IMG/VR virus record: IMGVR_UViG_3300022752_000015
Span: 1-64,000 of that record
Strand: one strand, 5' to 3'
Length of the DNA: 64,000 nucleotides
The notes beneath the pieces were generated by a model that had not been told where the DNA came from, did not search any database, and saw only the letters and a list, made by a program, of their open reading frames with translations. Positions 13,511 through 57,229 of the stretch are shown here, piece by piece (within the stretch, counting starts at the first letter, position 1; the number at the start of each line of letters is the position of its first letter). The translations under genes and the position numbers were made by a program.

Positions 13511-13516
13511 GGTTTC

Positions 13517-23040: not shown

Positions 23041-23056
23041 TGGTATATTTAGTTAC

Positions 23057-23665: not shown

Positions 23666-23666
23666 G

Positions 23667-23855: not shown

Positions 23856-23867
23856 GTGATCTATATA

Positions 23868-25176: not shown

Positions 25177-25250
25177 AACGATAATTTACTGTAAAATCTT
25201 TGCTTGTTCAACGATTGAACACCTTGCAACAAGTGATGTACATAAATATC

Positions 25251-38372: not shown

Positions 38373-39130
38373 AGTTCAATTATACCACCAACGACGGCTT
38401 CGTTCAAAAAGCTGGAACCATGTGTGTAGACTTGTTTGTTACGAGTAACTATACAAGAACCGCCTTTGAATGTCAAATCTCTTTCTTTTCCAACGCGATT
38501 AGAAACGATGATATTTGCATTCGTTTGTTCGGCAAGTTCTACCCATGTATGATCCGGATGACCTACATTCCCACCCCAGTTTGTCAATAATGCTATAGTA
38601 TCAACCGACCCTTTTCTATAGAATCTTTGATCTTCTTTGTAAAACTTGTAACTTTCTCTATAGACATTCATAGCATCTCTACAGATCAAAGCGCCAAGTC
38701 GACCAGCTCTTGTTATAACAACGGGATTAAATGCTTCTGAAGACTCTGCCCACAAATAATCGTTAGCCCAAAGATTGTGTTTTTGAAAATTAGCGCTAAC
38801 GCCATTTGGACCTACGACTACAGCTGAATTATACAGCTTTCCTTCATTCAATTCTACGTATCCGACCACGATGTGACAATTGTACTGTTTAGCTATTGGC
38901 AGAAATGCTTCAGTTTGGTAACCATCTCTAGTTTGCGCACATTGAGAAGCTTCTTGTTTATTGCGCAATACATAACCGCTGATGCACAATTCTGGTAGTA
39001 CCACTACGCTCGCTCCTTTTGCTGCGGCTTCATGAGCAAGATAACGAGCAGTAGAAAGATTCTTTTGTACGTCAAGAATCTTCGGTTCGAATTGTACTGC
39101 AGCGGCTATGGTAGCATTAAACATTTTCAA
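38369..39130 (-). CDS. carbon-nitrogen hydrolase (nitrilase family)
   Basis: LPELCISGY, YNSAVVV, FQKHNL, GALICRD, SNRVG; E-K-C triad. Confidence 0.9.
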   Translation of the reverse strand: MKMFNATIAAAVQFEPKILDVQKNLSTARYLAHEAAAKGASVVVLPELCISGYVLRNKQEASQCAQTRDGYQTEAFLPIAKQYNCHIVVGYVELNEGKLYNSAVVVGPNGVSANFQKHNLWANDYLWAESSEAFNPVVITRAGRLGALICRDAMNVYRESYKFYKEDQRFYRKGSVDTIALLTNWGGNVGHPDHTWVELAEQTNANIIVSNRVGKERDLTFKGGSCIVTRNKQVYTHGSSFLNEAVVGGIIEL

Positions 39131-41969: not shown

Positions 41970-42508
41970 GCACCACCTCCAGATGGTCCCATAGCTCTAT
42001 CGGCTGGCGGTGCTGGGAATTTCGAAAATTTTTCTTCTGATTGATTTTTGCCAACTTCTATATCGTACTGTTCTTCTAATATTTCTTTAAATGATTGTAT
42101 GACGCTCGAATCATAACTCTTTGATAAGAAATTTATGGCTCTACGAACCACAGTGTCTCTTACCTCTAAAAGAGAATCGTAGTTATCAATTAAACGAACT
42201 ACACTGTTTGTAAAGGATTCTAGATCTATATCATCGATTGTGAGATCAGATGGAACTTCTTGAACTTTATCATCTTTTTCTTCTTTGTCATCTTCTGCTT
42301 CTAACAGAAAATTTCTCGTCATAATTTTGAAATCAAATCCTTCTTTTTTAACAGAAGTCGCTTCTTTTTCATATTTGGCGAAGTAAGAGTCTATTTGCGA
42401 ATCTAAAGAGTCTTCCGATTCTACTTTAGAAGATTTGCTTTTCTCCTCGAGCAAATGAGATACGCTATCTTTAATAATCTTTTTCAACTCTTTTAAATGA
42501 ATTTTCAT
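41966..42508 (-). CDS. hypothetical protein with N-terminal LKKIIKD helix
   Basis: MKIHLKELKKIIKDSVS. Confidence 0.7.
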   Translation of the reverse strand: MKIHLKELKKIIKDSVSHLLEEKSKSSKVESEDSLDSQIDSYFAKYEKEATSVKKEGFDFKIMTRNFLLEAEDDKEEKDDKVQEVPSDLTIDDIDLESFTNSVVRLIDNYDSLLEVRDTVVRRAINFLSKSYDSSVIQSFKEILEEQYDIEVGKNQSEEKFSKFPAPPADRAMGPSGGGA

Positions 42509-43233
42509 TTTAATACCTGCGCAATTTGCTCGGCTTTCTTAACTCTCTCTTCAACAACATTCCAATTAATTTCTCTCATTTGAGAAACTATATAGCTCTG
42601 TTTGTCGTTCAAGTAATCGCGATAAGCATGTTCCCAAACGTCTAGAACGATCACTGGATATATACCCAACATAACATTAGCGTCATGACTTCCGACGAAC
42701 GTATTCACATATCGTTGCAAAAACATGTGATATCCGCAAACAGCCCAACCAACTCCGGCTGAGTTTGAACATGCTATGAAATCTCTTTGCCAGTCTTCAA
42801 ACGTGCCGAAATCTCGTTCCAATCGTAGATAAGACAAAGAATCCATTGTGATCTCAGAATGAGGATCAAAACAATTCGAGAAGTATAACTCGTGAAGCCA
42901 AATCGCGTTCAGGTTATAAACCTCATCTTTTTTCAGAGATTTATACGATGAGTGACGAGGATTAGCGTCTCCACGTTTTGAAGTGTCAAGTTCAGCAGAT
43001 ACTTTGTTGAATGATTCAACGTAGCCCTTGTAGAGATCATAATGAGCATCTTTGGTTTTTTGAGTAACAAACTCAGTTACTTGTTTAAAAACCTTGGGTT
43101 CAGCAACGTAAGATTCATTTATCTGATCTGCTTGAGGCATTAACCCAATAGATGGCGCTTTTTTAGAAATGCTGTCCTTAACAGCTTTTTTTAATAACGA
43201 GTCTATTTTTTGAGGATCTATAAGCTTGTTCAT
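42505..43233 (-). CDS. Fe/Mn superoxide dismutase family protein with N-terminal extension
   Basis: AHYDLYKGYV, LHELYF, DFGTFEDW, GWAV, LDVWEHAY. Confidence 0.88.
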   Translation of the reverse strand: MNKLIDPQKIDSLLKKAVKDSISKKAPSIGLMPQADQINESYVAEPKVFKQVTEFVTQKTKDAHYDLYKGYVESFNKVSAELDTSKRGDANPRHSSYKSLKKDEVYNLNAIWLHELYFSNCFDPHSEITMDSLSYLRLERDFGTFEDWQRDFIACSNSAGVGWAVCGYHMFLQRYVNTFVGSHDANVMLGIYPVIVLDVWEHAYRDYLNDKQSYIVSQMREINWNVVEERVKKAEQIAQVLK

Positions 43234-43636: not shown

Positions 43637-44095
43637 TTATAAAGAAATTATATCTTCATACTTTTTACAAGAAGTATTGCTATTCTTGAATATCTCATCT
43701 GTAGCAGACTCTTTATCTAAATAATCGACTTCATAGACAACATTTTGAATTCCGCTATTCACGATGCGACGGGCACACATTGAGCAAGGCTTATGAGTAC
43801 ATAACATGATTAGTCCAGATCGAAGTTCATAAGGCTTGCAAAGATGAAAAAGAGCATTTTCTTCGGCATGGAGAAATCCTGAGTTACCGTGGTCTAAAGA
43901 ACTTCTCTCGTTAGGCCCGCCTTTGTATCCTCCGTTATACCCGATAGCACAAACTTCTCTAAAGTCTGGAGTGATAATAATTGAAGCTACCTTATATTTC
44001 GGATCATATGAAAGAACAGACAGGTCCCTGCACATTTGCATGAAAACAGAAAGCTTTAATTTTTTCCTATCAATCATTTCAGCTAGCCGGATCAA
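43637..44095 (-). CDS. dCMP deaminase
   Basis: IGYNG, HAEENA, PCSMC. Confidence 0.9.
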   Translation of the reverse strand: MIRLAEMIDRKKLKLSVFMQMCRDLSVLSYDPKYKVASIIITPDFREVCAIGYNGGYKGGPNERSSLDHGNSGFLHAEENALFHLCKPYELRSGLIMLCTHKPCSMCARRIVNSGIQNVVYEVDYLDKESATDEIFKNSNTSCKKYEDIISL

Positions 44096-44642
44096 ATATT
44101 ACTGGATGACACTTTAAACATCTTGGTTCATAAAGTTCAGCTCCGCCGACCTCTATTTCATTTCCTCCAATCTGCTTTTTGTATGTGTAATGAGCATCTT
44201 TGTTGCAGACTGTACAGACCGCCGTCCGTTTTTCCACCTGAGTTGCCCAAGGCAGCATTTTTTCAATTTCATTGAATGGTTTTCCGCTGGCTGATAGATC
44301 TAATGACGATACCACTATCGAATATCCACTTCTATAAAGCCAGACTAAAACTTTCGAAATACCTGGTATCATGAATGCTTCATCAACAGCCACGACATGA
44401 GGATTTTCATTCATCTCTGACAATTTTTCAAGTATGTCGGTTCCTTCTTTTATGCAAATGGCAGGTACTTTCCACCCGCTATGAGTACAAATATACTCTT
44501 CACTGTATCTATCATCTAAGCGTGGCTTAAACACAGCCACTCGTTTGTTTTGGTATTTAAAACGATCTATTGAAGACAGCAGTCCGGTTGTTTTGCTAGA
44601 AAACATTGGACCCGTATAGAGTATGAATTGAGGATTTGACAT
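44079..44642 (-). CDS. tdk: thymidine kinase
   Basis: GPMFSSKT, VDEAF, CTVC, GGAELYEPRCLKC. Confidence 0.93.
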   Translation of the reverse strand: MSNPQFILYTGPMFSSKTTGLLSSIDRFKYQNKRVAVFKPRLDDRYSEEYICTHSGWKVPAICIKEGTDILEKLSEMNENPHVVAVDEAFMIPGISKVLVWLYRSGYSIVVSSLDLSASGKPFNEIEKMLPWATQVEKRTAVCTVCNKDAHYTYKKQIGGNEIEVGGAELYEPRCLKCHPVIFDPAS

Positions 44643-44648
44643 AACACC

Positions 44649-45647
44649 TTATTTGTTAAAAAATTTATAGCCGTTAAATTCCGTTGATTTCAAAAGGTCT
44701 AACTTAAAGTTTTCAGAATCAACACCTTTTAACTTATTTGCTCTATGCGAAATTAAAATCTTGCACCAATCATTCCAATATTCAGAACCAGCATTGAGAT
44801 TAGAAGCCAACTGTTTTAATTCATCAATAGTCTGACAATTTCTGCACTTGGATTCTTGCTCCAAAATATATTCTAAAGGTAGTTTACCCTTTGGTAGCTT
44901 CGGCATTTCTAAACTAAAAAACTCTCGTTTTTTTAGAATTTCTTCTACCATTCCAAAATGCTTTTCATAAATATGCAAAGAATTGCTTACGTGAGTATAC
45001 TCACCAACGCTTATAGACCTGTTCAACCTATCCGATAATTGATTAGCCAACAACTCTTGAAACAACGTGAATGCAGGAACATCATACGCAATTCCTAAGA
45101 TGAGATCAGATGATCTCATAGAGACTATCATGTGAACCTGATCGTTACGCAAAAAAAACTGCAAAGACAAAGTGCAAGGAACGTCCTTTGAGGCTAGGAT
45201 AGAATCCTGAGGAGATCTAATATGAATGACGGCTCGGCGAGAATCTGGATCTGCCGTCAGTTCATTCAAGATGTAATCCCATTGTGTCCAAGAAGGATCG
45301 ATTTGACCAGCAATTCTTGAATGAGGATTAAAAATCCTGGCACCGTAAGCGCTGTTAGCTGTAGTGCCATCATCAGAAATGTTCTTCCAAAAAGAAGAAT
45401 AATTCGATATCCATTCAGTGGAATCGTTTCCAGAAAGATACCACAAAGACTCTGCAACAAAATATGATAAGCTAAAGTCTCTTTGCTCTACATACGGTAA
45501 TCTATCAAGAGGATTAGAAATCCTGAATGATACGCCCAACTTTTCTCTGATCTTCTGCCCTCGAGGAGAAGAAACAAAGTCAGGATGCTTGTAGACGTCT
45601 AGAAGCAGATCATAGTAGGCTTCAGTGAAGCTAGAAAAAACTTTCAT
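44649..45647 (-). CDS. thymidylate-synthase-family enzyme, probable dCMP hydroxymethylase/methylase
   Basis: AYGAR, DSRRAV, DVPCT, MRSSDLILGIAYD (Asp at the nucleotide-specificity site), SLHIY. Confidence 0.8.
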   Translation of the reverse strand: MKVFSSFTEAYYDLLLDVYKHPDFVSSPRGQKIREKLGVSFRISNPLDRLPYVEQRDFSLSYFVAESLWYLSGNDSTEWISNYSSFWKNISDDGTTANSAYGARIFNPHSRIAGQIDPSWTQWDYILNELTADPDSRRAVIHIRSPQDSILASKDVPCTLSLQFFLRNDQVHMIVSMRSSDLILGIAYDVPAFTLFQELLANQLSDRLNRSISVGEYTHVSNSLHIYEKHFGMVEEILKKREFFSLEMPKLPKGKLPLEYILEQESKCRNCQTIDELKQLASNLNAGSEYWNDWCKILISHRANKLKGVDSENFKLDLLKSTEFNGYKFFNK

Positions 45648-46624
45648 ATATTCTCTTTATCACTCAACGTTTTAATTAGTTCCCAATTGTCCTGATACCA
45701 CTGGATTGTTTTTTCCAATCCTTCCCAAAAATACACCAGGGGAGTGTAACCTAAAACTTCTTTTGTCCTAGAAATATCAGCTTGAGTGTGCATGACATCA
45801 CCAGGTCTCCAAGGAGCATCATGGTATTTCGCATCAGGAAATTTTTTCAACAAAAATTGCAAAATTTCTCTATTTGTTGTCCTGTCGCCACAAGCCACAT
45901 TTAAAGTTTCAGACTTTAATGGGAAATTTGCCTTTGCTGCTCTTACGCATGCATCGGCAACATTATCAACATAACACATGTCGCGAGATTGCGTTCCGTC
46001 TCCGTCAGAACGCATCAAAGTCCCCTTCATAATTGCATTGACCCACGCAGAAACCGCTGTGGAATAAGGAGAATTTCCTAACTGATTTGGACCAAAGACG
46101 TTAAAGAACCTTAGGCTGACTGAATCGAACCCATAAAGATCATAATACATCTTCAAATAATCTTCAATTATAGATTTTTGCAAAGCGTAAGGTGATTTAG
46201 GGTTCTTTACAGCATTAGGAGGAGTTGGTAGCTGGTCAGCACCTCCGTAAACAGATGACGAGGATGCAAAGACAAAACGTTTAATCTTTCCTCGACAAGC
46301 ATCAATCAATTTCATTGTTGCTGTCACGTTTGCGTTGTGAGATTCAAGAGGAAAATCGACGGAATAACTCACGCGCGGGACGGCAGCCAAGTGTATAACA
46401 ACATCATACAATCCAGACCTTATCTTTGCTAAGATTGTTTCGGAGTCAAAGCTGGCAATCGTAATGTTACGATCCAGCAGCGAGGGATCAACAAACGACA
46501 TGTGACCGTTTGACAGATCGTCAACGATGTCAAATTCTATATTTTCTGCCATTAATCTTTTTGCGACGTTACTGCCTATGAAGCCCGCACCACCCGTCAA
46601 TAAAATTCTCATATGATTATACAC
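45644..46624 (-). CDS. NAD-dependent NDP-sugar epimerase/dehydratase
   Basis: TGGAGFIG, ASSSSVYG, YALQK, LRFFNVFGP. Confidence 0.92.
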   Translation of the reverse strand: MYNHMRILLTGGAGFIGSNVAKRLMAENIEFDIVDDLSNGHMSFVDPSLLDRNITIASFDSETILAKIRSGLYDVVIHLAAVPRVSYSVDFPLESHNANVTATMKLIDACRGKIKRFVFASSSSVYGGADQLPTPPNAVKNPKSPYALQKSIIEDYLKMYYDLYGFDSVSLRFFNVFGPNQLGNSPYSTAVSAWVNAIMKGTLMRSDGDGTQSRDMCYVDNVADACVRAAKANFPLKSETLNVACGDRTTNREILQFLLKKFPDAKYHDAPWRPGDVMHTQADISRTKEVLGYTPLVYFWEGLEKTIQWYQDNWELIKTLSDKENI

Positions 46625-46664
46625 CTTTTTTAATTATAAACAAGCTTGTTTCATATTTACAATT

Positions 46665-47393
46665 ATGAGAACGTTTAATGTCATCAATAAATCGACCAAC
46701 GTTTCCGAAGCAGATTTAACCCTCATGGTTGAAGCCTGCAAAATACAGTTAGCCCAACATGCAGCCCCACTCCTGGAAAGGGTGCCGTGGGAGATAAAGG
46801 TAGGTGGTAATGATGGATTCCCCGTTGTTCTTATTGACTCTCCAGATGTTGCTGGTGCTCTTGGATACCATACGCAAGATCCTGACGGAAGAGTTTGGTG
46901 TAGAGTTTTTACGGACCCGTTACTAAAACATGGTGGAACAACACTAAAGGGCACTCATGCAGTCTCTACCGTGTTATCACATGAAATACTTGAAACCTTC
47001 TATAATCCGTACATCAATCTGTGGTCTAACAGAGGAGATCACACATTCGTTGCGTTAGAACTATGCGACCCTGTTCAAGGAGACTCGTACGAGATTGATG
47101 TCAATGGTACACCCGTTTCTGTCTCTAACTTTGTGCTTGAAGCTTGGTTTGATAGGGAAATGAGTAAAGCGGGTAGATTCGATTATATGAACACTATAAA
47201 AAAGCCTCTAGATATGTCCAGAGGCGGGTATACTATTATTTTTAATAGTGAAACAGGTGAAGTCAAATCAGTATTTGCTAGCAAAGAAGGAGAAGACTTA
47301 CATAACCTCTTGAAACCTGGGCATCCTGCTTCTAGATCGTCTCGTAACAAAAGTGATTGTCCGCTGAGACAACACACGTTACCTACGTACTAA
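46665..47393 (+). CDS. putative metallopeptidase-like protein
   Basis: ALGYH, VLSHEILE, ELCDPV, VSNFV motifs. Confidence 0.55.
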   Translation: MRTFNVINKSTNVSEADLTLMVEACKIQLAQHAAPLLERVPWEIKVGGNDGFPVVLIDSPDVAGALGYHTQDPDGRVWCRVFTDPLLKHGGTTLKGTHAVSTVLSHEILETFYNPYINLWSNRGDHTFVALELCDPVQGDSYEIDVNGTPVSVSNFVLEAWFDREMSKAGRFDYMNTIKKPLDMSRGGYTIIFNSETGEVKSVFASKEGEDLHNLLKPGHPASRSSRNKSDCPLRQHTLPTY

Positions 47394-47578
47394 GAAGATT
47401 TTGAAGAATAGTTATCAGCAGCCCATCCAGAACCCTTCAAGACAAATGTTGATTTGCTTATAAGTCTTCGTAAAAAGTCAGTTTTACAACGAGGGCAGTT
47501 TGTCAATGGTGGATCTTTGATTGATTGTTCCGCTTCAAACTGATGATTGCAAGCTTTGCATTCATATTCATACGTCAT
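47390..47578 (-). CDS. FmdB-family zinc-ribbon protein
   Basis: YEYECKAC...CPRC...RRLIS...FVLKGSGW. Confidence 0.88.
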   Translation of the reverse strand: MTYEYECKACNHQFEAEQSIKDPPLTNCPRCKTDFLRRLISKSTFVLKGSGWAADNYSSKSS

Positions 47579-48372
47579 ACAATTCCTCCTTGCGAAGTAA
47601 TTTTTACAGGGAACATAACCGAAGTTCCGACAAATGGAGACGTACCAGGCTGTCTAACTAAGCTTAAAGGACCATTAGCAGTAGCAAGATCACATTTCAT
47701 TGGATCTTGCAGAACGTCAGATAAGCGATGTATGACACCGTCGATCCAACAAGCTTGAGAAACAAGCTGACAAATTTGAGAATAATCAGAGTGTTTCATA
47801 TCATGAGCAGTTGCATTCGGCTGGATCACTGATATTGTCGATCCATTTAGCTTGTTCTGCTTGGATCCAGTTGGGTGACCTTTTATACCCTTGTAGTTCG
47901 TGCCAACGAAATGCCACCCATAGTTACAAGCTCTTCTAGGATTTAAGTCTAATTTCTTATCTAAAATCCAATGCTTTCCAGGGGAGGCTACTAATCCTGT
48001 CACATTAAACCCAACTTTTCCATTTACCATTTTGCTGTGTTTGATCATAGAATCGACTGTTGAAGATATCGTCATAGGACAGGGTTCTACTCGGTGCGTA
48101 GCATTGATAAACATTAAGTCAGCGATGTGTGTTGTCAATAAAGACGCATTAAATACATCTGCTAGCTTTTGCTGAAGTTCTGCAGATACATTAACTCTTA
48201 TGCCGTCAATTTTCAATGCATCATTCATCACATTGAATTTAATGGTTCTTCCTCCTGAAGAAAATTCGAGAGGAACCCATTCTGCATCAAAATTGCCAGC
48301 TAAAACTTGATCAAAAATGTATTTTTCTCTATCAGCTAATTTTTCAGGAAAAGTCATAATCATTTCTTCCAA
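47575..48372 (-). CDS. conserved hypothetical protein
   Basis: IDGIRVNVS, GKHWI, NYGWH, IQP..TAH...DYSQ motifs. Confidence 0.65.
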   Translation of the reverse strand: MEEMIMTFPEKLADREKYIFDQVLAGNFDAEWVPLEFSSGGRTIKFNVMNDALKIDGIRVNVSAELQQKLADVFNASLLTTHIADLMFINATHRVEPCPMTISSTVDSMIKHSKMVNGKVGFNVTGLVASPGKHWILDKKLDLNPRRACNYGWHFVGTNYKGIKGHPTGSKQNKLNGSTISVIQPNATAHDMKHSDYSQICQLVSQACWIDGVIHRLSDVLQDPMKCDLATANGPLSLVRQPGTSPFVGTSVMFPVKITSQGGIV

Positions 48373-49361
48373 AAAGAGTACATGTTCTTTTCAATCTCAT
48401 AATCCATGTTCTTTATTTGTCTATCAGGCTGCTTCATAGCCCAGACAAACATTTCTTTAATCATATCTCTAAGATTAGTTTCATCTTTAAACCCTAACAG
48501 CTTATGAGCTTTACTGTGATCGCAGTATGCAGTGTGCACTTCATTGCGTTTTTCTAAATGAACCTTGGTCGCTTTAACTCCAAGCTCAGCTGCAACGTCC
48601 ATCACGAGATCGCAAGCTTCGTTAATTGTGAAATCTTTATCAGCTCCTATGTTGAAAGTTTCACCGTCAAAAGACGTCATAAGCTTTTCAAAAGGAGCCA
48701 TATAGAACTTGATGTCTGAAAAAGCACGTTTTTGTGTACCGTCTCCAAAGATAGTCAGCGGTTCTCCAACAAGAGCTTTACGAATCCAAATGCCTATAAC
48801 GTTTCGATACCTATCCCAAATATTTTGATAAATGCCAACAACGTTGTGCGGGCGAACAATGCTGTATCTTAGTCCAAACATTTCATGCGCAAGTTTGAGA
48901 TCCATCTCTACTGCATATTTCGCAATACCGTAAGGATCCTCTGGGGTTGGTAGCTGATCTTCTGTAAAGGGTGGATTGCCTACTCCGTATACCGCCATCG
49001 ATGAGGTAAAAACAATCTTTTTGATATCATGATTTACACAAGCATTAATTACATTAGCGGAAGCTAACACGTTGTTTGTGTAGTTGTAATTTCTAATGAA
49101 AGGACTCAATCCTTCTGCTGCGTACGCAGCAAAATGGAAAACATAATCAGGTTTTTCTTTTGCAAATACCTCTTCTGTTTTATGACGATCTACCAAGTCT
49201 ACGTCGTAGAATGTCATTTCTTTTGGAACAGAATCTAGATATCCGCCGCTTAAATCATCAATCCCAACGACATCATAACCTCTGGACAACAGATATCTAG
49301 AAAAATTTGCCCCAAGAAGTCCAGCTACGCCTGTGATTAGAACCTTATCTTTTTTCATCAT
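48360..49361 (-). CDS. NAD-dependent NDP-sugar epimerase/dehydratase
   Basis: TGVAGLLG, TSSMAVYG, YGIAK, RPHNVVG. Confidence 0.92.
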   Translation of the reverse strand: MMKKDKVLITGVAGLLGANFSRYLLSRGYDVVGIDDLSGGYLDSVPKEMTFYDVDLVDRHKTEEVFAKEKPDYVFHFAAYAAEGLSPFIRNYNYTNNVLASANVINACVNHDIKKIVFTSSMAVYGVGNPPFTEDQLPTPEDPYGIAKYAVEMDLKLAHEMFGLRYSIVRPHNVVGIYQNIWDRYRNVIGIWIRKALVGEPLTIFGDGTQKRAFSDIKFYMAPFEKLMTSFDGETFNIGADKDFTINEACDLVMDVAAELGVKATKVHLEKRNEVHTAYCDHSKAHKLLGFKDETNLRDMIKEMFVWAMKQPDRQIKNMDYEIEKNMYSFWKK

Positions 49362-50386
49362 ACGAGTGTCTCCAAGAAATCTATTACGTCGCTTACAGAA
49401 AATACATTCTTATTTTTCAAAATCGTCATTTGTTCTTTGACTAAAGAAACTCTGAATTCGTACGAAAGCTTGCTGATGTATTTGACTTGAGCGATTACTT
49501 GTTCTGACGTCGATACTGTCCACTCACTTCCTAGTAAGTTTGGGATCAAAAACTCTGATGGGACCAAAGCGGGCGTGCCCACAGCCATATTTTCTAAGTA
49601 ACGAGGAGATGCAAACCCGCGCTTAGCGTATTCTGGCTTGGTTATGTGCGTTGCGCAGATAAAAGAATTCAATCTTTTCATTGAATCATGAAAATTCAAA
49701 CGCTGCGCAAATGAGACGTAGGGATGCTCTTTTATCAAGGACGTGGGATGTTCTCTCTCAGGAGAAACTTCTAACCAGTTACCATGAACCGTCGTCTGTA
49801 TTCCTAAATTTCTAAGCTCTCTTGACGGTGAGGAATAGTATCTATAAAACGCTTCTGGTCTTTCATAATTGTTTCCTACGTAGCCGTATTCAAAAGACAC
49901 GTTGGACGGTTGCAACAAAAATTGCCAATCTGTCCAAAACATCAATCTTTCTCTTTTTCTGGTCAAATATCTTGGCTCAAATGCAGGATCTGCAATTATA
50001 GCTTTAGGCCATGCGAGCTCATCTTCTGGAGTCACCTTGTAATCACAATCCCAAATAACAACAGGAATCTTTCCATGATAATGCCGAAGAAGCTCGTTTT
50101 GTCTGAGCAGATCAGGTTCGGCAGGATTTTCTCCTGAATTTTTATACGTTGGCCAACGCCACTCAACGAACAAAACATCTATGTCAGGAAATCCCTCATC
50201 ATAATTGATGTTTTTATATGGCACAACTTCTCTACGTTTTTGTAATGCATAAATCTGGTGTCCTGACGTGACGGCTGCGTTCACAAAAATAGGACGACCA
50301 TACCGATGACCATCAGGCGTTTTTGCTTCTCCTGATGTCCCAAAAGGTTCACAAAAACCCCAATAACTAATTCCGATGCGCATCAT
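49358..50386 (-). CDS. GT-B glycosyltransferase resembling T4 DNA beta-glucosyltransferase
   Basis: MRIGI..WG, YGYVGN...R, VHGNW, FASPRYLENMA..ALVPSEF, comparable to BGT FITLRVWETMA..MLIDEEF (from memory). Confidence 0.7.
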   Translation of the reverse strand: MMRIGISYWGFCEPFGTSGEAKTPDGHRYGRPIFVNAAVTSGHQIYALQKRREVVPYKNINYDEGFPDIDVLFVEWRWPTYKNSGENPAEPDLLRQNELLRHYHGKIPVVIWDCDYKVTPEDELAWPKAIIADPAFEPRYLTRKRERLMFWTDWQFLLQPSNVSFEYGYVGNNYERPEAFYRYYSSPSRELRNLGIQTTVHGNWLEVSPEREHPTSLIKEHPYVSFAQRLNFHDSMKRLNSFICATHITKPEYAKRGFASPRYLENMAVGTPALVPSEFLIPNLLGSEWTVSTSEQVIAQVKYISKLSYEFRVSLVKEQMTILKNKNVFSVSDVIDFLETLV

Positions 50387-50916
50387 GCCTCCTTTTTCAA
50401 GAATTTACGAATGGTCTCCATTTCCCATTCTAGGTTTTCAGAATCAATGCAAAAGCGTAATACGTCACATTTGGTCCACTTTGCAAATTCTTCATACATG
50501 TCTGACAATTTTTGTAGATGATATTCACCTATGTTATGAATATCGTCTTTTAGACCAGAATAAGAAGTCCTATACGGAATGACTATCTTAACGCCAAAAG
50601 AAGCTGCAAGAAAATCAATATGAGACAGAGCATCATGATCGGTCTTTCTATCATAAACTCTTGAATACACCCATTCGGAAGGATACGATCGATCAAGAAT
50701 AACAGACGTCTTGGTGTCTCGAAGAAAAGTGTAGAAGTAAGGGTCTCCATATCGAAGAGCCTTCACGAAATAATCTGGATCTGAGCTAAATGCTTTCCAT
50801 TCTGATTTGTTCTTGAAATATGGAATCTCCATTCGTCTCGAAAGCTCACGAGCCATTTCGGTCTTGCCAACCTTGTCACATCCTTCGAAAATTACGATAG
50901 TGTTCATGTTATTCAT
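50383..50916 (-). CDS. thymidylate-kinase-like dNMP kinase
   Basis: IFEGCDKVGKT P-loop; ILDRSYPSEWVY. Confidence 0.85.
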   Translation of the reverse strand: MNNMNTIVIFEGCDKVGKTEMARELSRRMEIPYFKNKSEWKAFSSDPDYFVKALRYGDPYFYTFLRDTKTSVILDRSYPSEWVYSRVYDRKTDHDALSHIDFLAASFGVKIVIPYRTSYSGLKDDIHNIGEYHLQKLSDMYEEFAKWTKCDVLRFCIDSENLEWEMETIRKFLKKEA

Positions 50917-53900
50917 CGATTACCTTAACCTTGCTCATAAAAGTTTTATTACCGTAATTATCGACAGTAATTTCTGCTATGCATGTGGAGTACTTCGGCA
51001 ACTCAGTTCGGCCATCCCATCCCCAACAAAAGATCCGACGGGTTTGGCCTTCGAGGCCTATTGCCGTCAGAAGCAAGTATGGCTTTCCGTTCTTCGTCTT
51101 TTTTTCTTTTACGTCAGAAATAATGAACCAATAAACGTCAGTTTGCTCGATGAGGTCGATGGATTTGACGCCTTTAGATTCTAGCTTTGCAATCAGTTCT
51201 TGAGAAACTAAAATGTTAGAGTTGAATGATCCAAGATATTTCACACTGTTGTCAACCAACTCCCCACGAGTCCACTCATCTATGTCATTTGTTTCTATCA
51301 AAAGATTTCGAAAGTTTTCCATACCGAGAGTAGGATTTTTCTTTGAAGTTTTCTTGATGTCGGCACCTTTATCAATCAAGATGTGATGCATCTGTTTGTA
51401 GCTGTTGAATGTTTTTCCTTCGCCCACGCAGTCAAGAGAGTCAAACGCTCTGATGGAGATGAGACCTTCAAAAGCTCGCTTGTTAAATTTGGAATGTTTC
51501 CATGAACCATCATCATTCCACAACATCTCTTCGACACTCTTGTAAGGTCTGTTCTCGACGATTTCATCGATAGCAGCCTCTCCAATTCCCTTGCAAGACA
51601 AGAAGCTTGGCATGAATCGTTTACCTTCCAAGATTGTCCAGCTCTTTGTCGCGTAGTTTACGTCAATTGGAACGATCTTATATCCTAGCGCTTTTACTTC
51701 TGAAAAAGCTTTGGCTCGTTTCTCGTCGTTTCCTGACATCGATTCGAGATATGCGCATAGCCATTCCTCTTCATAATAAGTCAAGAGCCAAGCGCAATAG
51801 TAAGAATCAATTGCATAAGACACGGCATGCGAGGCATTAAAGCCGTATCCAGAGAAGAATAGAATCTTATCGTATAGTTCAGATGCGACCTTCTCGTTGA
51901 CGCCATTCTTCACGGCACCTAACACGAACTCTTCTTTTGCTTTCCTCGCATCCGCTGCAGCATCGTCTTTCTTAGACGCGCTGCGCTTCATAATGTTACG
52001 ACGGATGGTGTCAGTCTCAGCCTCAGGGAATCCCGCCACCACAGAACATAACCTCATGGTCTGCTCTTGAAAGATGATACAACCGTATGTAGACTCGAGG
52101 ACTTTTTTGATCAATGGATGTTGATAGTCAATCTTGTCAGGATTATTCTTTGCATCAATATAAAGTTTATCCACGTTAGCCGCAAGAGGACCAGGACGAT
52201 AGATCGAAGTAAGAGTGGCAATGTCGATGATGCTACGTGGTTTAGCCTTCGTAAACAGCCGCTGAGCACCTGTTTGTGTTAGCTGGAAGATACCTGCGAA
52301 CCTACCTTCGTGGTAAACATATTCGTAGACCTTTTGATCGTTCAGATCAATGTTCTTCGGATCCATATGCTTATCAAACCACGCTCGAATTTGCTTAAAA
52401 TCAGGATTCTTTACACCTTCCCGGCGCTCGAGGATTAGGCCGATGCATCGTTCGATGATACGTAAGGTTTCAAGACCTAGCAGATCGAACTTGATCCACC
52501 CAAATTCTTCGAGATGTTTATAGTTCATGCCTTCGACCCAAGGTGTCTGGGCCTCACCACGAGCAAGGATTAGAGGCATTCTTTCGGCGACATCTTCTGA
52601 TACGATGACGCCACCGGCGTGGCGGCCCAAAGAACGGTTTTGCTTGAATAAAATCTCAATTGGTTCGGCCACCTCGGGATGTGCAGCAATGAAGTCTTGT
52701 AGAGACTTTGAATACTTGATGGCGTCTTCGTATGTAAGAACGAACAAGTTCTTGTCTGTTCCTGGTTTAAAGACCTCCTTCTTGACATCATCCTCGACGG
52801 GAGCAAGAGCAGCGTTGACTTCCTCAAAAGGGATGCTGTAGAATCGAGCAATATCTTTAATGAGGCTCTTTAACCTGAAGGTGTTGTAGTTGGAGATAGG
52901 AATGACGTTCCTTTCGCCAAGATTCTTTCTAAGAAGTTCGATCAATAAATCTCGATCAGAGATGTCAGAGTCAATATCAGGGGCGCCTGTTCTAGAAGGA
53001 TTCAAAAATCTTTCAAAAGAAAGATCATATTCAATTGGATCCAAATTCGTAATTCCAAGAACATAGGCTACAAGTGAACCAGCAGCTGATCCACGACCTG
53101 GTCCGATCAACATATGCTCACGAGCAATATCCATGATAGCCTTCATCGTCAAGAAGTACCTAGAGAACTTCTTACCTTTGATGATACCTAGCTCATATTT
53201 GATTCTGTCGATGTAGTCTTGTCTTGAGTCTAGACCTCTCCACTTCAATCCATTTTTACACGCAACCACGAGTGCCTTATCTTCCGTGGTTCCCTCAGGG
53301 ATCACGTAAGAAGGAAGCTTCATTGTCTTGTCAGGCTGAATGTCACCTAATTCGTTATGAACGATATCATGGGTTCTTTCAATCGCGTCCTTAACAAATT
53401 CATCGTCATAGAAATCCATGCCTTCCGTCGTAGACAAATAAGATTCCCACACCTGCTTGGCATTTTTGGGATACAATTCGCATTTTAAATCGTCCTTAGA
53501 CTTAGGCAACAAGCTTGGATCAAAGTTTTGATAGTTAAGCCAACCTAGCTTCTTATAAATCTCTCGTTCTTTCCAGTTTTCTGGTCGTGAATAGTGCGAG
53601 TCGCAAGTAACCACCACTCTATCGCGCAGGGAATTTCGTTTGGAAAACTCAATGAGAGCTCGATTAACAAGATGCTGAGCAGGGAGCTTGTTGAATTGTA
53701 GTTCAAGACACACGTTATCACGACCGACGGCATCAACTAACTTGTCGTAAGTGTTACTCATCGTAGCAATGATACGATCCAAAAGTGATCTGTCATTAAG
53801 CAATTGGTGTTTCAATTCTTCGAACGGAACCTTTTGAAGCTGTTCGAAAGCGTCGAAAGCCAAAGGACCGCCTAAACAAGCTGTGCTGATCATGAGATGA

Positions 53901-54502
53901 TCACCTTTTGCTGCTTCTTTTAGCATCGAATAATCGATTCGAGGGAATCGGTAAAATCCCTCCATGTATCCCCTGGATACCAGATGGAACAGACGTTGAA
54001 GACCTACTGAGGTTTTTGGTAGAACAACTAGATGATGACGACGTTTGACGGGATCATTGTATTTACCTGACTTCGTCTCGTCCTCGTTCTCAACAGTCAA
54101 AGCTGCTTCATCCGTGCCAACGTCTGTCGTCTCGTCATCGCCATCAACGACCGCGGTGATAGGAGTAATGATGGACTCGTCCTTTGCAGGTTTTACCTTG
54201 GACGCTTCCAGATCTTTTTTCCACTGGGTAAGATCAGGATGAACGTACATCTCGCAGCCAGGGATAAACTTAAAGTTCTTTCCTGACTTTTTCATCTTTT
54301 CGGCATGAAGAAAAGCGTGACAGAACCCATTCATGTTACCATGGTCCGTCAACGACCAGGCATCCATACCGTTCTCTAACACGTAATCGATGTGTTCTTG
54401 CGGGTAATCAAGACCATCGTACTGCGAAAATGTAGAATGCGCGTGGAGACCGACGAACCGATTTGGTCCCCCGCCACGCATTTCCTTCTTGCTGTTTGAC
54501 AT
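50909..54502 (-). CDS. dnaE: DNA polymerase III alpha subunit
   Basis: PHP domain HAHSTFS/TDHG, GPGRGSAAGS, PDIDSD, GRHAGG, KFDLLGL, FSGYGFNASH. Confidence 0.97.
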   Translation of the reverse strand: MSNSKKEMRGGGPNRFVGLHAHSTFSQYDGLDYPQEHIDYVLENGMDAWSLTDHGNMNGFCHAFLHAEKMKKSGKNFKFIPGCEMYVHPDLTQWKKDLEASKVKPAKDESIITPITAVVDGDDETTDVGTDEAALTVENEDETKSGKYNDPVKRRHHLVVLPKTSVGLQRLFHLVSRGYMEGFYRFPRIDYSMLKEAAKGDHLMISTACLGGPLAFDAFEQLQKVPFEELKHQLLNDRSLLDRIIATMSNTYDKLVDAVGRDNVCLELQFNKLPAQHLVNRALIEFSKRNSLRDRVVVTCDSHYSRPENWKEREIYKKLGWLNYQNFDPSLLPKSKDDLKCELYPKNAKQVWESYLSTTEGMDFYDDEFVKDAIERTHDIVHNELGDIQPDKTMKLPSYVIPEGTTEDKALVVACKNGLKWRGLDSRQDYIDRIKYELGIIKGKKFSRYFLTMKAIMDIAREHMLIGPGRGSAAGSLVAYVLGITNLDPIEYDLSFERFLNPSRTGAPDIDSDISDRDLLIELLRKNLGERNVIPISNYNTFRLKSLIKDIARFYSIPFEEVNAALAPVEDDVKKEVFKPGTDKNLFVLTYEDAIKYSKSLQDFIAAHPEVAEPIEILFKQNRSLGRHAGGVIVSEDVAERMPLILARGEAQTPWVEGMNYKHLEEFGWIKFDLLGLETLRIIERCIGLILERREGVKNPDFKQIRAWFDKHMDPKNIDLNDQKVYEYVYHEGRFAGIFQLTQTGAQRLFTKAKPRSIIDIATLTSIYRPGPLAANVDKLYIDAKNNPDKIDYQHPLIKKVLESTYGCIIFQEQTMRLCSVVAGFPEAETDTIRRNIMKRSASKKDDAAADARKAKEEFVLGAVKNGVNEKVASELYDKILFFSGYGFNASHAVSYAIDSYYCAWLLTYYEEEWLCAYLESMSGNDEKRAKAFSEVKALGYKIVPIDVNYATKSWTILEGKRFMPSFLSCKGIGEAAIDEIVENRPYKSVEEMLWNDDGSWKHSKFNKRAFEGLISIRAFDSLDCVGEGKTFNSYKQMHHILIDKGADIKKTSKKNPTLGMENFRNLLIETNDIDEWTRGELVDNSVKYLGSFNSNILVSQELIAKLESKGVKSIDLIEQTDVYWFIISDVKEKKTKNGKPYLLLTAIGLEGQTRRIFCWGWDGRTELPKYSTCIAEITVDNYGNKTFMSKVKVIDE

Positions 54503-56161: not shown

Positions 56162-57229
56162 TCACTTTCCGTGAGGACCATTTTCTTTGACAGCATTTGA
56201 AGTGATACCTAAAAATTTAGCTTTGCTTCTAAACTCTCTAATACTTTTAGCGCCTGAATATGACAGACCTGATTTAATGCCTTCAAGCAGGTCTGTCAAA
56301 GTATCTTGAAGAGAACCTCTGTAAGGGATCAACGTTGACTCTCCTTCAGCAACGGACACCTTACCTCTCCATTCCAATTGCGCTTCTCTTGAAGCCATTC
56401 CGCGAAACTTCTTGTAACGTTGGTTGTCTTTTGTAATGATTGCTCCTGGGGATTCATCATGTCCAGCAAGAACTGATCCTAGCATCACCATGTCCGCTCC
56501 AGCAGCTAGAGCTTTCACTGCATCGCCGCTGTTCCTAATTCCACCATCTGCTACAATGTAAACGTCCCTGTCGGATTTTGCACAATCGATGATTGATTGC
56601 AGCGTTGGAACTCCATGTCCTGTGCGAATTCTCGTTGTACACATGGATCCTCCTCCGACACCGGTACGTATGGAATCAGCACCCCAGTCAGCAAGATCAT
56701 TGAAGGCTTCCAAAGTTGCAACGTTGCCAGTCATTATGTGAATTTTTTTACCAAATTTTACTCTTAGCTTATTTAGAGCATTTTTAACATTCGTGTGGTG
56801 ACCATGCGCAACATCAACGCAGAAAGCCCTACAACCCACGTCATATAGTTCAACTGCTCTTTCAAGATAATCACCCGTCGCACCAACAGCCACCATCAAG
56901 TTCGGGATAAAAGCCGAAGAACTATTGTCACAATCATCAAGCAATAGTTTAGCCGTTTCAAGAAACATCTTTTTAGAATCATCGATTGAACAGTATCGAT
57001 GCAAAACTCCGAAGCCTCCAAGCTTTGCAATGACAGCCGCCGACTGAGGACTTATTACTGTGTCCATAGGAGAACCGACAATGGGACACTTTAATTCTTC
57101 GTGTTTGTCGGTTAAGCTAGCAAAAGCGGAGTCAAATCCAGGCACTGAAAGATCTACATGCGATCTAGACTCTATGTCTGAAAGTTGAGGGACGAGCAGT
57201 ACATCATCGAAGCACAATGAACGTTGCAT
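56162..57229 (-). CDS. IMP dehydrogenase / GMP reductase family (no CBS domains)
   Basis: [42 protein letters not shown]. Confidence 0.93.

What the first reader, a model, noticed from the sequence alone, without database searches (positions are those of the whole stretch)
43637..50916. Candidate new sugar-cytosine DNA hypermodification cluster next to dnaE
Seen: a co-oriented run directly downstream of dnaE containing a dNMP kinase, a GT-B enzyme, an epimerase, an interruption of three unrelated ORFs, a second epimerase, a TS-family enzyme, thymidine kinase and dCMP deaminase. The TS homologue reads RSSDLILGIAYD. Established: E. coli ThyA has Asn177 here (dUMP-specific), T4 dCMP hydroxymethylase gp42 has Asp179, and the Asn-to-Asp change switches specificity to dCMP. 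The GT's motif order resembles T4 beta-glucosyltransferase (recalled, not aligned). Inference: the phage makes 5hmC-type (or 5-hydroxy/5-methyl) dCMP, phosphorylates it with its own kinase, and glycosylates DNA with a non-glucose sugar made by the two epimerases. The PMM-like HAD at 29325 might supply the sugar phosphate. Caveat: dCMP deaminase and TK also fit ordinary dTMP supply.
Basis: partly seen in the sequence, partly recalled or inferred. Interest (0 to 1): 0.88.

Follow-up and report, generated by a model that had tools for sequence, protein, structure and literature searches.

The report
Phage sugar-hydroxymethylcytosine DNA modification gene cluster
An uncultured ~213-kb aquatic phage carries, next to its DNA polymerase, a conserved gene set that most likely replaces cytosine by 5-hydroxymethylcytosine and decorates it with a sugar made by its own epimerases; this is an uncharacterised version of a known anti-restriction strategy, not a new principle.

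Summary
On the minus strand, downstream of dnaE, lie a thymidylate-kinase-like P-loop kinase, a GT-B glycosyltransferase, a GalE-like epimerase, three conserved unknown ORFs (one on the opposite strand), a WbgU/WbpP-like epimerase, a thymidylate-synthase homologue, thymidine kinase and dCMP deaminase.

The TS homologue matches T4 dCMP hydroxymethylase gp42 at all 13 active-site positions checked (L143D, C146, D169, N177D, Ser167, Arg126). It is therefore not a thymidylate synthase, not an RB69-type 5-hydroxycytosine synthase (those have D169N), and not MilA-type ribo-specific.

The GT family is small (381 clusters at 50% identity). It was not found in 185,579 bacterial and archaeal genomes. 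In every informative locus it lies within a few kb of a cytosine-type TS homologue, usually beside the kinase. This holds in distant lineages, including one with a gp42-type enzyme.

In sister phages the same slot holds an unrelated GT-B or a carbamoyltransferase cassette; 5hmC carbamoyltransferase is an experimentally shown activity.

The kinase-GT-TS triad matches RB69, DLP3 and RL38J1.

I conclude this is a 5hmC glycosylation pathway fed by epimerase-made UDP-sugars: a new variant of a known kind. Three things are unproven: the sugar, whether the acceptor is DNA or a nucleotide, and how dCTP is excluded. The PMM-like HAD link has no support.

The parts
50909..54502 (-). DnaE-type DNA polymerase III alpha (1197 aa); upstream anchor of the module, overlaps the kinase start by 8 nt
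   Evidence: Pfam PHP, DNA_pol3_alpha 2.8e-55, finger, HHH_6. Adjacent to the module in nearly all relatives.
50383..50916 (-). Thymidylate-kinase-like P-loop nucleotide kinase (177 aa). Proposed to phosphorylate 5hm-dCMP, or a glycosylated derivative.
   Evidence: P-loop FEGCDKVGKT. phrog_761 thymidylate kinase 7e-12. 27% identity, E 2e-8, to RB69p045 'nucleotide kinase' of the RB69 cytosine-arabinosylation cluster. Found near the GT in 43 of 44 GT loci and directly beside it in most.
49358..50386 (-). GT-B fold glycosyltransferase of a small, virus-restricted family (342 aa). Proposed 5hmC glycosyltransferase.
   Evidence: AF2 pLDDT 93.4, pTM 0.90. Foldseek PDB: BshA 7e-11, T4 BGT 4e-9 (TM 0.63), T4 AGT 1e-8. 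BFVD: SP-15 GTs and others. hhalign to T4 BGT is only E 1.3e-3, aligning invariant R262/E265 with BGT R269/E272. 381 clusters in 1.84 billion representatives. Not found in the genome-contig scan.
48360..49361 (-). Epimerase 1: GalE-like NAD-dependent UDP-hexose 4-epimerase (333 aa)
   Evidence: Pfam Epimerase 4.5e-49. Best PDB hit is T. maritima UDP-glucose 4-epimerase 4zrm, 1.3e-42. S/Y/K triad intact; Ala at the GalE Y299 gatekeeper position. Present in only a subset of relatives.
47575..48372 (-). Conserved unknown protein (265 aa). Function unknown; probably not a core part of the pathway.
   Evidence: No Pfam, PHROG, NCBIfam or PDB match. 63% identical to a homologue in L003, where it sits directly after dnaE. 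Absent from marine relatives.
47390..47578 (-). FmdB-type zinc-ribbon protein (62 aa)
   Evidence: Pfam Zn_ribbon_8 2.6e-14. Conserved in the freshwater subclade.
46665..47393 (+). Conserved unknown protein on the opposite strand (242 aa)
   Evidence: 64% identity over 228 aa to the opposite-strand gene in L003. Called on the opposite strand in L001 and L003. No family match.
45644..46624 (-). Epimerase 2: WbgU/WbpP/TviC-like UDP-HexNAc(A) 4-epimerase (326 aa). Its stop overlaps the TS start by 4 nt.
   Evidence: PDB 6dnt 5.5e-54, WbgU 2e-50, WbpP 7e-46. S/Y/K intact; Thr at the gatekeeper where WbgU has Ser and GalE has Tyr299. An epi2-type gene accompanies the TS homologue in nearly all related loci.
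44649..45647 (-). TS-family pyrimidine hydroxymethylase, predicted dCMP 5-hydroxymethylase (332 aa, with a C-terminal extension)
   Evidence: Pfam Thymidylat_synt 7.9e-28. Best PDB hits: MilA 3e-41, T4 gp42 5e-14. Signature at ThyA positions 58/94/126/127/143/146/147/166/167/169/177/207/209 is EYRRDCTRSDDHY, identical to T4 gp42, in the window and in 46 of 48 relatives. RB69 gp48 differs (D169N).
44079..44642 (-). Thymidine kinase (187 aa)
   Evidence: Pfam TK 8.1e-40. NCBIfam thymidine kinase 1.4e-42, 146 bits, below the 183-bit equivalog cut-off.
43637..44095 (-). dCMP deaminase (about 138-152 aa, depending on the start codon)
   Evidence: Pfam dCMP_cyt_deam_1 8.7e-16. Conserved downstream of the TS homologue in relatives.

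Best explanation
The cluster is a cytosine hypermodification pathway of a large uncultured aquatic phage.

1. The TS homologue converts dCMP, with methylene-tetrahydrofolate and water, to 5-hydroxymethyl-dCMP. This is inferred from an active site identical to T4 gp42.
2. The adjacent TMPK-like kinase raises it to the diphosphate, host NDP kinase makes the triphosphate, and the phage DnaE polymerase incorporates it. This step is inferred.
3. The two phage 4-epimerases convert host UDP-Glc/UDP-GlcNAc-type donors into their C4 epimers (UDP-Gal, UDP-GalNAc or a uronic analogue). The family assignment is shown; the substrates are inferred.
4. The GT-B enzyme transfers that sugar to the 5-CH2OH group, most likely on DNA as in T4. 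This step is inferred.
5. TK and dCMP deaminase keep dTTP supplied, as cd and tk do in T4.

The likely purpose is protection of phage DNA from restriction and CRISPR nucleases. The tailoring slot next to the kinase is exchangeable: sister phages carry an unrelated GT-B or a carbamoyltransferase cassette there.
For: - TS signature identical to T4 gp42 at 13 positions, in the window and in 46 of 48 relatives. The diagnostic value of N177D, L143D/E and D169N comes from PMC13326640. Ser167/Arg126 as deoxyribose determinants come from PMC5175136.
- GT is a confident GT-B. T4 BGT and AGT are among its structural neighbours, the same hit pattern (BshA, BGT) as experimentally validated phage DNA GT-Bs.
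- 44 IMG/VR loci carry the GT family. All 41 with enough flank have a TS homologue within a few kb, and 43 of 44 have the kinase. Gene order is shuffled, yet the linkage is kept.
- The linkage persists in distant members: L049, L052 and L126; L136 has P-loop protein-GT-TS-dnaE; L135 has a P-loop protein-GT pair in a T4-like phage.
- L026 pairs this GT family with a gp42-type hydroxymethylase (54% identity to gp42, 27% to the window TS).
- The slot is mutually exclusive in 77 TS-centred loci: GT342 in 45, the unrelated GT-B u428 in 12, the carbamoyltransferase cassette in 9, never two types together. 5hmC carbamoyltransferase paired with an N177D TS is experimentally established (PMC8670742).
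- GT activity dependent on a partner epimerase on 5hmC is experimentally established (bioRxiv 2023.12.21.572611).
- The kinase-GT-TS triad is shared with RB69, DLP3 and RL38J1, and the kinase is homologous to RB69p045.
- The GT family is small and was not found in bacterial or archaeal genomes.
Against: - No chemistry: everything rests on sequence, predicted fold and gene neighbourhood.
- No dCTPase/MazG-type enzyme to exclude dCTP was recognised in the 64-kb window; there is only a generic NUDIX at 34934-35353. Full replacement of C is therefore unproven.
- The GT family is acidic to neutral (median pI 5.97, against 9.05 for T4 BGT), and its best structural matches use small-molecule acceptors. 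This weakens the 'acts on duplex DNA' step.
- Most co-occurring loci belong to one broadly syntenic phage lineage, so part of the linkage is inherited gene order.
- Both epimerases persist in sister loci that have a carbamoyltransferase but no recognisable GT. Their role as donor suppliers for the GT is therefore not proven.
- The TS homologue is closer in sequence to MilA than to gp42.
Confidence: 0.68

Rival explanations
1. Pre-replicative glycosylation. The GT acts on the free nucleotide (5hm-dCMP) rather than on DNA. The dedicated TMPK-like kinase next to it phosphorylates the glycosylated monophosphate, so that the sugar-bearing dCTP analogue is incorporated directly by the phage polymerase.
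For: - A P-loop kinase lies beside or close to the GT family and to its two replacement cassettes.
- The best structural matches are small-molecule-acceptor GTs: BshA, tetrahydrobiopterin GT and SenB.
- The family pI of about 6 is unlike DNA-binding T4 BGT at 9.05.
- PMC13326640 states it could not tell whether the first sugar is added to the mononucleotide or to DNA, and single GTs were inactive on 5hoC DNA.
- 5hmC carbamoyltransferase accepts 5hm-dCTP (PMC8670742).
Against: - All characterised 5hmC glycosyltransferases (T4 alpha- and beta-GT, and the metavirome GTs of bioRxiv 2023.12.21.572611) act on DNA.
- Whole-protein pI is a crude proxy.
- The kinase is equally explained as the ordinary 5hm-dCMP kinase, since no gp1-type dNMP kinase was seen in the window.
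Confidence: 0.17
2. 5hmC is made and incorporated, but the GT and the epimerases serve another target, such as host envelope polysaccharide, a virion protein or a small metabolite. They sit here only because of inherited gene order.
For: - Phage-encoded nucleotide-sugar epimerases are common auxiliary genes (phrog_540).
- The epimerases persist in loci without a recognisable GT.
- The dnaE-to-SOD region is syntenic across the lineage.
- The GT family is not basic.
Against: - The GT stays next to a cytosine-type TS and a P-loop kinase in distant lineages, with different gene orders and even with a different TS lineage.
- Its slot alternates with a carbamoyltransferase of a class shown to act on 5hmC.
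- There is no membrane anchor or polysaccharide-locus context.
- The family was not found in cellular genomes.
Confidence: 0.1
3. The TS homologue makes a different C5 product. Candidates are 5-methyl-dCMP (Xp12-like), 5-hydroxy-dCMP (RB69-like) or ribo 5hm-CMP for a MilA-like small molecule.
For: - The best PDB match is MilA, and the protein has a long C-terminal extension.
- N177D alone also fits methylation (PMC8670742).
- The kinase-GT-TS triad is shared with the 5hoC phages.
Against: - Position 143 is Asp, the hydroxymethylase pattern rather than Leu.
- D169 is kept, whereas all tested 5hoC synthases have Asn, including RB69 gp48.
- Ser167 and Arg126 are the deoxyribose pattern; MilA has Ala and Lys.
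- No MilB-like hydrolase is present, and the setting is a replication module.
Confidence: 0.04
4. Ordinary dTMP supply: the TS homologue is a thymidylate synthase working with TK and dCMP deaminase.
For: TK and dCMP deaminase are adjacent. Sources annotate relatives as 'thymidylate synthase'.
Against: N177D, L143D and H147T are invariant in the family. NCBIfam thymidylate synthase scores fall far below the cut-offs (82.5 against 327).
Confidence: 0.01

Closest known systems
T4 glucosyl-5hmC pathway (gp42 dCMP hydroxymethylase, gp1 dNMP kinase, gp56 dCTPase, alpha- and beta-glucosyltransferases, cd, tk)
   Same: The TS-family hydroxymethylase has an identical active-site signature. A phage nucleotide kinase, dCMP deaminase and thymidine kinase are present. 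The GT-B transferase has BGT and AGT among its structural neighbours.
   Different: - The hydroxymethylase belongs to a separate, longer clade that is closer to MilA.
- The kinase is TMPK-like, not gp1-like.
- The GT has no sequence-level relation to GT63 or GT72.
- Two phage 4-epimerases imply a donor other than host UDP-glucose.
- No dCTPase was seen in the window.
- The polymerase is DnaE-type.
Kinase-GT-TS triads of RB69, DLP3 and RL38J1 (glycosylated 5-hydroxycytosine; PMC13326640)
   Same: Same local architecture: TMPK-like 'nucleotide kinase', then a BshA-like GT-B, then a TS homologue whose best PDB hit is MilA. The window kinase is homologous to RB69p045 (27% identity, E 2e-8).
   Different: - Those TS homologues carry D169N and make 5hoC with a flavin. 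The window enzyme keeps D169 and has the hydroxymethylase pattern.
- The sugar supply there is an arabinose pathway or a UDP-Gal mutase; here it is two 4-epimerases.
- The GTs are unrelated in sequence.
Metavirome 'subclass II' GT plus partner epimerase pathways on 5hmC (bioRxiv 2023.12.21.572611)
   Same: A GT is paired with an adjacent sugar epimerase. In that study GT activity on 5hmC depended on the epimerase, giving Hex, HexNAc or HexA adducts. The same paper notes that GT-B enzymes are often next to ThyS in metaviromes.
   Different: Those validated pathways make 5hmC post-replicatively (C5-methyltransferase plus TET). Here 5hmC would be made pre-replicatively by a TS homologue, there are two epimerases, and the GT family is different.
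5hmC carbamoyltransferase clusters (PMC8670742)
   Same: An N177D TS homologue, a dCMP deaminase and a tailoring transferase acting on the 5-CH2OH group. Sister phages of the window carry such a carbamoyltransferase in the very slot where the window has its GT.
   Different: The window itself has a glycosyltransferase, not a carbamoyltransferase.
MilA / BcmA CMP 5-hydroxymethylases (nucleoside antibiotic biosynthesis)
   Same: Best sequence match in the PDB (E 3e-41). Cytosine-specific Asp and a C-terminal extension beyond the TS core.
   Different: MilA's ribose determinants Ala176 and Lys133 are Ser and Arg here. There is no MilB partner, and the context is a phage replication module.

Membership tests
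T4-type dCMP 5-hydroxymethylase (TS superfamily) | TS fold with catalytic Cys146 and the conserved E58, Y94, R166, H207, Y209 | tested here: met
   Pfam PF00303 7.9e-28; signature alignment.
T4-type dCMP 5-hydroxymethylase (TS superfamily) | Asp at ThyA Asn177 (cytosine specificity) | tested here: met
   D in the window and in all 48 relatives checked.
T4-type dCMP 5-hydroxymethylase (TS superfamily) | Acidic residue at ThyA Leu143 (water access, hydroxymethyl product) | tested here: met
   Asp, as in gp42, SPO1 gp29 and MilA.
T4-type dCMP 5-hydroxymethylase (TS superfamily) | Deoxyribose determinants Ser167 and Arg126 | tested here: met
   Ser and Arg are present; MilA has Ala and Lys.
T4-type dCMP 5-hydroxymethylase (TS superfamily) | Groups with gp42 in a phylogeny | tested here: not met
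   The family forms its own clade. gp42 groups with L026's enzyme instead (SH-aLRT 100). The deep branches are long and uncertain.
T4-type dCMP 5-hydroxymethylase (TS superfamily) | Catalyses dCMP to 5hm-dCMP | not testable with these tools
   Needs an enzyme assay or in vivo LC-MS.
5-hydroxy-dCMP synthase (RB69 gp48 type) | Asn at ThyA Asp169 | tested here: not met
   The window has Asp; RB69 gp48 has Asn in the same alignment. Criterion from PMC13326640.
MilA/BcmA CMP hydroxymethylase | Ala at MilA 176 and Lys at MilA 133 (ribose preference) | tested here: not met
   Ser and Arg in the window.
T4 beta-glucosyltransferase family (GT63) | Sequence-level homology to BGT | tested here: not met
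   No phmmer or profile hit in the PDB. hhalign E 1.3e-3, probability 18%, C-terminal 82 columns only.
T4 beta-glucosyltransferase family (GT63) | GT-B fold of similar size with a UDP-binding Arg/Glu motif in the C-terminal domain | tested here: inconclusive
   Foldseek E 4e-9, TM 0.63. Invariant R262/E265 align with BGT R269/E272. The role of those BGT residues is recalled from memory, not checked here.
T4 beta-glucosyltransferase family (GT63) | Transfers sugar to 5hmC in duplex DNA | not testable with these tools
   Only context supports it. The family pI of about 6, against 9.05 for BGT, is mildly against DNA binding.
GT4 retaining glycosyltransferases (BshA/MshA-like) | Pfam Glycos_transf_1-type C-terminal domain above threshold | tested here: not met
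   Only Glyco_trans_1_2 at 21.1 bits, below the 25-bit cut-off. The best Foldseek hits are nevertheless BshA, at 7e-11.
UDP-hexose 4-epimerases (GalE / WbpP / WbgU, extended SDR) | N-terminal Gly-rich NAD-binding motif (first conserved segment in the alignment) and the Ser/Tyr/Lys catalytic triad | tested here: met
   Both epimerases; invariant S124, Y149 and K153 in E. coli GalE numbering.
UDP-hexose 4-epimerases (GalE / WbpP / WbgU, extended SDR) | Small residue at the GalE Tyr299 gatekeeper (room for N-acetyl substrates) | tested here: met
   Epimerase 1 has Ala; epimerase 2 has Thr, where WbgU has Ser.
UDP-hexose 4-epimerases (GalE / WbpP / WbgU, extended SDR) | Reaches the NCBIfam GalE or TviC equivalog cut-off | tested here: not met
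   139.8 and 149.8 bits against 262.3 for GalE; 158.8 against 760 for TviC. The assignment is at family level only.
Kinase-GT-TS cytosine glycosylation triad (RB69/DLP3/RL38J1) | TMPK-like kinase next to a GT-B, with a cytosine-type TS homologue in the same cluster | tested here: met
   Window layout. 41 of 41 informative GT loci have the TS homologue. Kinase homology to RB69p045. Published triads.

The most novel reading that the evidence does not exclude
The sugar is added before replication. The GT glycosylates free 5-hydroxymethyl-dCMP, and the TMPK-like kinase that always accompanies the tailoring cassette is specialised to phosphorylate the bulky glycosylated (or, in sister phages, carbamoylated) nucleotide. 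The DnaE polymerase would then build sugar-bearing DNA directly. This would also explain the unexplained 'nucleotide kinase' next to the first GT in RB69, DLP3 and RL38J1.
Probability: 0.17. Interest if true: 0.8.

Novelty: new variant of a known kind. Interest (0 to 1): 0.5.

Why it matters
If confirmed, this would add a new sugar adduct (probably galactosyl- or N-acetylgalactosaminyl-type) on pre-replicatively made 5hmC. It would also add a new, virus-restricted GT-B family to the DNA-modifying glycosyltransferases, which are useful tools for 5hmC labelling.

It would show that a widespread lineage of ~200-kb freshwater and marine phages carries a hot-swappable tailoring slot: two unrelated GTs or a carbamoyltransferase behind one conserved hydroxymethylase core. 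That is a natural experiment in the arms race with restriction and CRISPR systems.

The constant pairing of the tailoring enzyme with a small TMPK-like kinase makes testable the open question, raised in PMC13326640, of whether the first sugar is added on the nucleotide or on DNA.

Tried and rejected
1. Stop-codon recoding in the ORF-poor first 14 kb. Read-through of single stops gave no coherent long ORFs. The region is a dense run of small minus-strand ORFs.
2. PMM-like HAD (29325-30068) as sugar-phosphate supplier. It is a generic HAD-IIB/PMM-like hydrolase 20 kb away, no sugar-1-phosphate nucleotidyltransferase was recognised, and two 4-epimerases can work directly on host UDP-sugars. There is no evidence for a link.
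3. Sequence link of the GT to known DNA GTs. There was no tblastn hit in 50,697 phage records, no PDB sequence or profile hit, no hhalign relation to the two pieces of RB69 gp46:47 and no relation to the replacement GT u428.
4. Pattern scans of 185,579 bacterial and archaeal genomes found no relative of either the GT or the TS family, so there is no host clue. These scans depend on exact motifs and have limited sensitivity.
5. Search for a dCTPase, MazG or dUTPase in the window. Only a generic NUDIX was found. Not every small ORF was scanned.
6. The promoter and terminator scan of the cluster was no better than shuffled sequence (29 against 25.7 expected). The TTGTAA-18-TATAAT match just upstream of epimerase 2 is a consensus match only.
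7. I first recalled that 5-carbamoyloxymethylcytosine came from PMC8256090. That paper does not mention it. The correct source is PMC8670742.
8. PDB sequence searches for the 265-aa and 242-aa unknown proteins gave nothing.

Full report
**What is there.** The window comes from an uncultured phage: IMG/VR contig IMGVR_UViG_3300022752_000015, 212,804 bp, carries the GT and TS genes at 100% identity. No cultured phage is similar at the DNA level. The best DnaE protein matches in phage records are about 30% identical.

On the minus strand, ORFs with overlapping stops and starts form two blocks:
- Block 1: dnaE (50909-54502), a 177-aa P-loop kinase (50383-50916), a 342-aa glycosyltransferase (49358-50386), epimerase 1 (48360-49361), a 265-aa unknown (47575-48372) and a zinc-ribbon protein (47390-47578).
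- A conserved 242-aa gene lies on the plus strand between the blocks (46665-47393).
- Block 2: epimerase 2 (45644-46624), the TS homologue (44649-45647), thymidine kinase (44079-44642) and dCMP deaminase (43637-44095).

Family assignments come from Pfam, PHROGs and NCBIfam. That gene and the other two intervening genes are conserved at 53-100% identity in the freshwater subclade of relatives and are missing from marine relatives, where the cluster is contiguous.

**The TS homologue.** Its best solved relative is MilA, the CMP hydroxymethylase of mildiomycin synthesis (E 3e-41). T4 gp42 is much weaker (5e-14).

I aligned it with E. coli ThyA, T4 gp42, SPO1 gp29 and RB69 gp48. At ThyA positions 58, 94, 126, 127, 143, 146, 147, 166, 167, 169, 177, 207 and 209 it reads EYRRDCTRSDDHY. 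That is identical to T4 gp42, and the same string occurs in 46 of 48 relatives.

The published meaning of these positions is:
- N177D switches the substrate from uracil to cytosine.
- An acidic residue at 143 goes with a hydroxymethyl rather than a methyl product.
- D169N marks the flavin-dependent 5-hydroxy-dCMP synthases (PMC13326640).
- Ser167 and Arg126 mark deoxyribose preference, where MilA has Ala and Lys (PMC5175136).

RB69 gp48 shows D169N in my alignment; the window protein does not. I therefore call it a dCMP 5-hydroxymethylase. In a quick maximum-likelihood tree the family is its own clade, separate from gp42, but the deep branches are long and unreliable.

**The glycosyltransferase.** Sequence methods say almost nothing: a sub-threshold Glyco_trans_1_2 hit, no PDB hit even with a profile, and no match in 50,697 phage records.

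An AlphaFold2 model built on 46 family members is confident (pLDDT 93.4, pTM 0.90) and has a GT-B fold. Foldseek places it nearest to GT4 enzymes with small-molecule acceptors: BshA at 7e-11, then tetrahydrobiopterin glucosyltransferase and SenB. T4 beta-glucosyltransferase (4e-9, TM 0.63) and alpha-glucosyltransferase (1e-8) follow closely. Among viral models, SP-15 glycosyltransferases appear.

This is the same hit pattern reported for experimentally validated phage DNA GT-B enzymes (bioRxiv 2023.12.21.572611). hhalign to T4 BGT gives only a weak C-terminal match that aligns the invariant R262/E265 with BGT R269/E272.

The family is small: 381 clusters at 50% identity among 1.84 billion representatives. 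It was not found in a pattern scan of 185,579 cellular genomes.

**The epimerases.**
- Epimerase 2 resembles UDP-HexNAc 4-epimerases: 6dnt at 5.5e-54, WbgU at 2e-50, WbpP at 7e-46. It has Thr where WbgU has its gatekeeper Ser and E. coli GalE has Tyr299.
- Epimerase 1 is GalE-like (4zrm, 1.3e-42) and has Ala at that position.
- Both keep the Ser/Tyr/Lys triad.
- Neither reaches an NCBIfam equivalog cut-off, so the exact substrates are open.

**Comparative genomics: the main evidence.**
- Of 44 IMG/VR loci with a GT homologue, all 41 with enough flank have a TS homologue within a few kb, and 43 have the kinase. Most have an epimerase. Gene orders differ between subclades (kinase-GT-epi-TS-epi; GT-kinase-TS-epi; TS-x-GT-kinase-epi).
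- The link survives outside the lineage. L049, L052 and L126 have GT identity of 28-39%. L136 has P-loop protein-GT-TS-dnaE, with a TS carrying N177D. L135 has a P-loop protein-GT pair inside a T4-like phage.
- L026 pairs the same GT family with a hydroxymethylase that is 54% identical to T4 gp42 and only 27% identical to the window enzyme.
- In 77 TS-centred loci, the slot next to the kinase holds one of three mutually exclusive cassettes: this GT (45 loci), a 428-aa protein (12 loci), or a carbamoyltransferase with or without an ATP-grasp enzyme and a 217-aa unknown (9 loci).
- L059 has the window's exact layout with the 428-aa protein in place of the GT. Its model (pLDDT 87.8) is also a GT-B (sucrose-phosphate, trehalose-phosphate and glycogen synthase-like, 1e-11) but has no sequence relation to the window's GT.
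- A carbamoyltransferase paired with an N177D TS homologue was shown experimentally to carbamoylate 5hmC (PMC8670742).

The slot thus behaves as a 5hmC-tailoring position.

**Published precedents.**
- In RB69, DLP3 and RL38J1 the order 'TMPK-like nucleotide kinase, GT, TS homologue' is the same (PMC13326640, Table 1). The window kinase is 27% identical (E 2e-8) to RB69p045.
- GTs that need an adjacent epimerase to glycosylate 5hmC are documented, and GT-B/ThyS pairs were counted in metaviromes (bioRxiv 2023.12.21.572611).
- Bacillus phage G has a similar neighbourhood: alpha-glucosyltransferase, thymidylate kinase, dCMP deaminase and a TS with N177D.

**Mechanism and its weak points.**
- Shown by sequence: the active-site pattern, the folds and the linkage.
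- Inferred: the 5hm-dCMP product, phosphorylation by the kinase, the UDP-Gal/GalNAc-type donors, and transfer to 5hmC.
- Weak point 1: no dCTPase was recognised in the window.
- Weak point 2: the GT family is not basic (median pI 5.97 against 9.05 for T4 BGT).
- Weak point 3: both epimerases persist in sister loci that have no recognisable GT.
- Weak point 4: part of the linkage is inherited synteny.

The pI, the small-molecule-type structural neighbours and the ever-present kinase keep alive a more novel reading: the sugar is added to the nucleotide before replication. PMC13326640 explicitly left this possibility open for its own systems.

**Verdict.** This is an uncharacterised variant of the known 5hmC hypermodification strategy. 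It combines a gp42-like active site on a MilA-like scaffold, a TMPK-like kinase, a new virus-restricted GT-B family and two 4-epimerases. It sits in an exchangeable tailoring slot of a widespread lineage of large aquatic phages.

Noticed in passing
relatives L059, L003/L057, L061, L090 and others (slot between the kinase and the epimerase/TS genes): The position of the window's GT is occupied in sister phages by one of two alternatives. One is an unrelated 428-aa GT-B. The other is a TMPK-like kinase, ATP-grasp, carbamoyltransferase and 217-aa-unknown cassette. The three states never co-occur (45, 12 and 9 of 77 loci). One relative (L003) adds a small SAM-methyltransferase.
   Followed up: yes
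L061, L062, L064, L090, L105 (relatives): Both epimerase genes are kept in loci that have the carbamoyltransferase cassette but no recognisable glycosyltransferase. Either a GT is hidden (the 217-232-aa unknown?) or the epimerases have a role beyond feeding the GT. This is unexplained.
   Followed up: partly
window 31432-32676 (-): A full-length isocitrate lyase that passes the NCBIfam equivalog cut-off (761.9 against 562 bits). This is a glyoxylate-shunt auxiliary metabolic gene in a phage.
   Followed up: partly
window 42505-43233 (-): An Fe/Mn superoxide-dismutase-like protein with an N-terminal extension. It is conserved a few genes downstream of the TS cluster in nearly all relatives.
   Followed up: partly
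window 56162-57229 (-) and 57271-57828 (-): A GMP reductase/IMP dehydrogenase-family protein (Pfam IMPDH 2e-92) and a calcineurin-like phosphoesterase lie just upstream of dnaE.
   Followed up: no
window 57828-59513 (-): A 561-aa protein whose C-terminal part weakly matches the PHROG 'cytidyltransferase' (1.7e-8), with no Pfam hit. It might be a nucleotidyltransferase relevant to sugar or NAD metabolism.
   Followed up: no
window 37992-38372 (-), 38369-39130 (-), 34934-35353 (-): A pterin-4a-carbinolamine dehydratase-like protein, a nitrilase/CN-hydrolase and a generic NUDIX hydrolase. The NUDIX is the only candidate seen for nucleotide-pool cleansing, and it has no specific assignment.
   Followed up: partly
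window 1-14000: A dense run of small (70-130 aa) mostly minus-strand ORFs with almost no ORF above 130 aa. Single-stop read-through does not restore long ORFs, so there is no sign of recoding. It looks like an early-gene region.
   Followed up: partly
window 19973-26677: A lysozyme with a peptidoglycan-binding domain (19973-20794, +), a 668-aa bactofilin-domain protein (20966-22972, +), an FGE-sulfatase-domain protein (23868-24800, -) and a trypsin-like peptidase (25940-26677, -).
   Followed up: no
L133 (Bacillus phage G, NC_023719 229448-238461): Phage G has alpha-glucosyltransferase gp313, thymidylate kinase gp315, putative dCMP deaminase gp317 and TS homologue gp319 (signature EYRQDCTRSDDHY, so N177D) clustered together. 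This suggests the same kind of module in a cultured jumbo phage.
   Followed up: partly
L135 (Logan SRR34066000 contig, 8.2 kb): A distant member of the GT family, preceded by a 180-aa P-loop protein, sits between Gp23-type major capsid and prohead protease genes of a T4-like phage. The kinase-GT pair therefore travels as a unit.
   Followed up: partly
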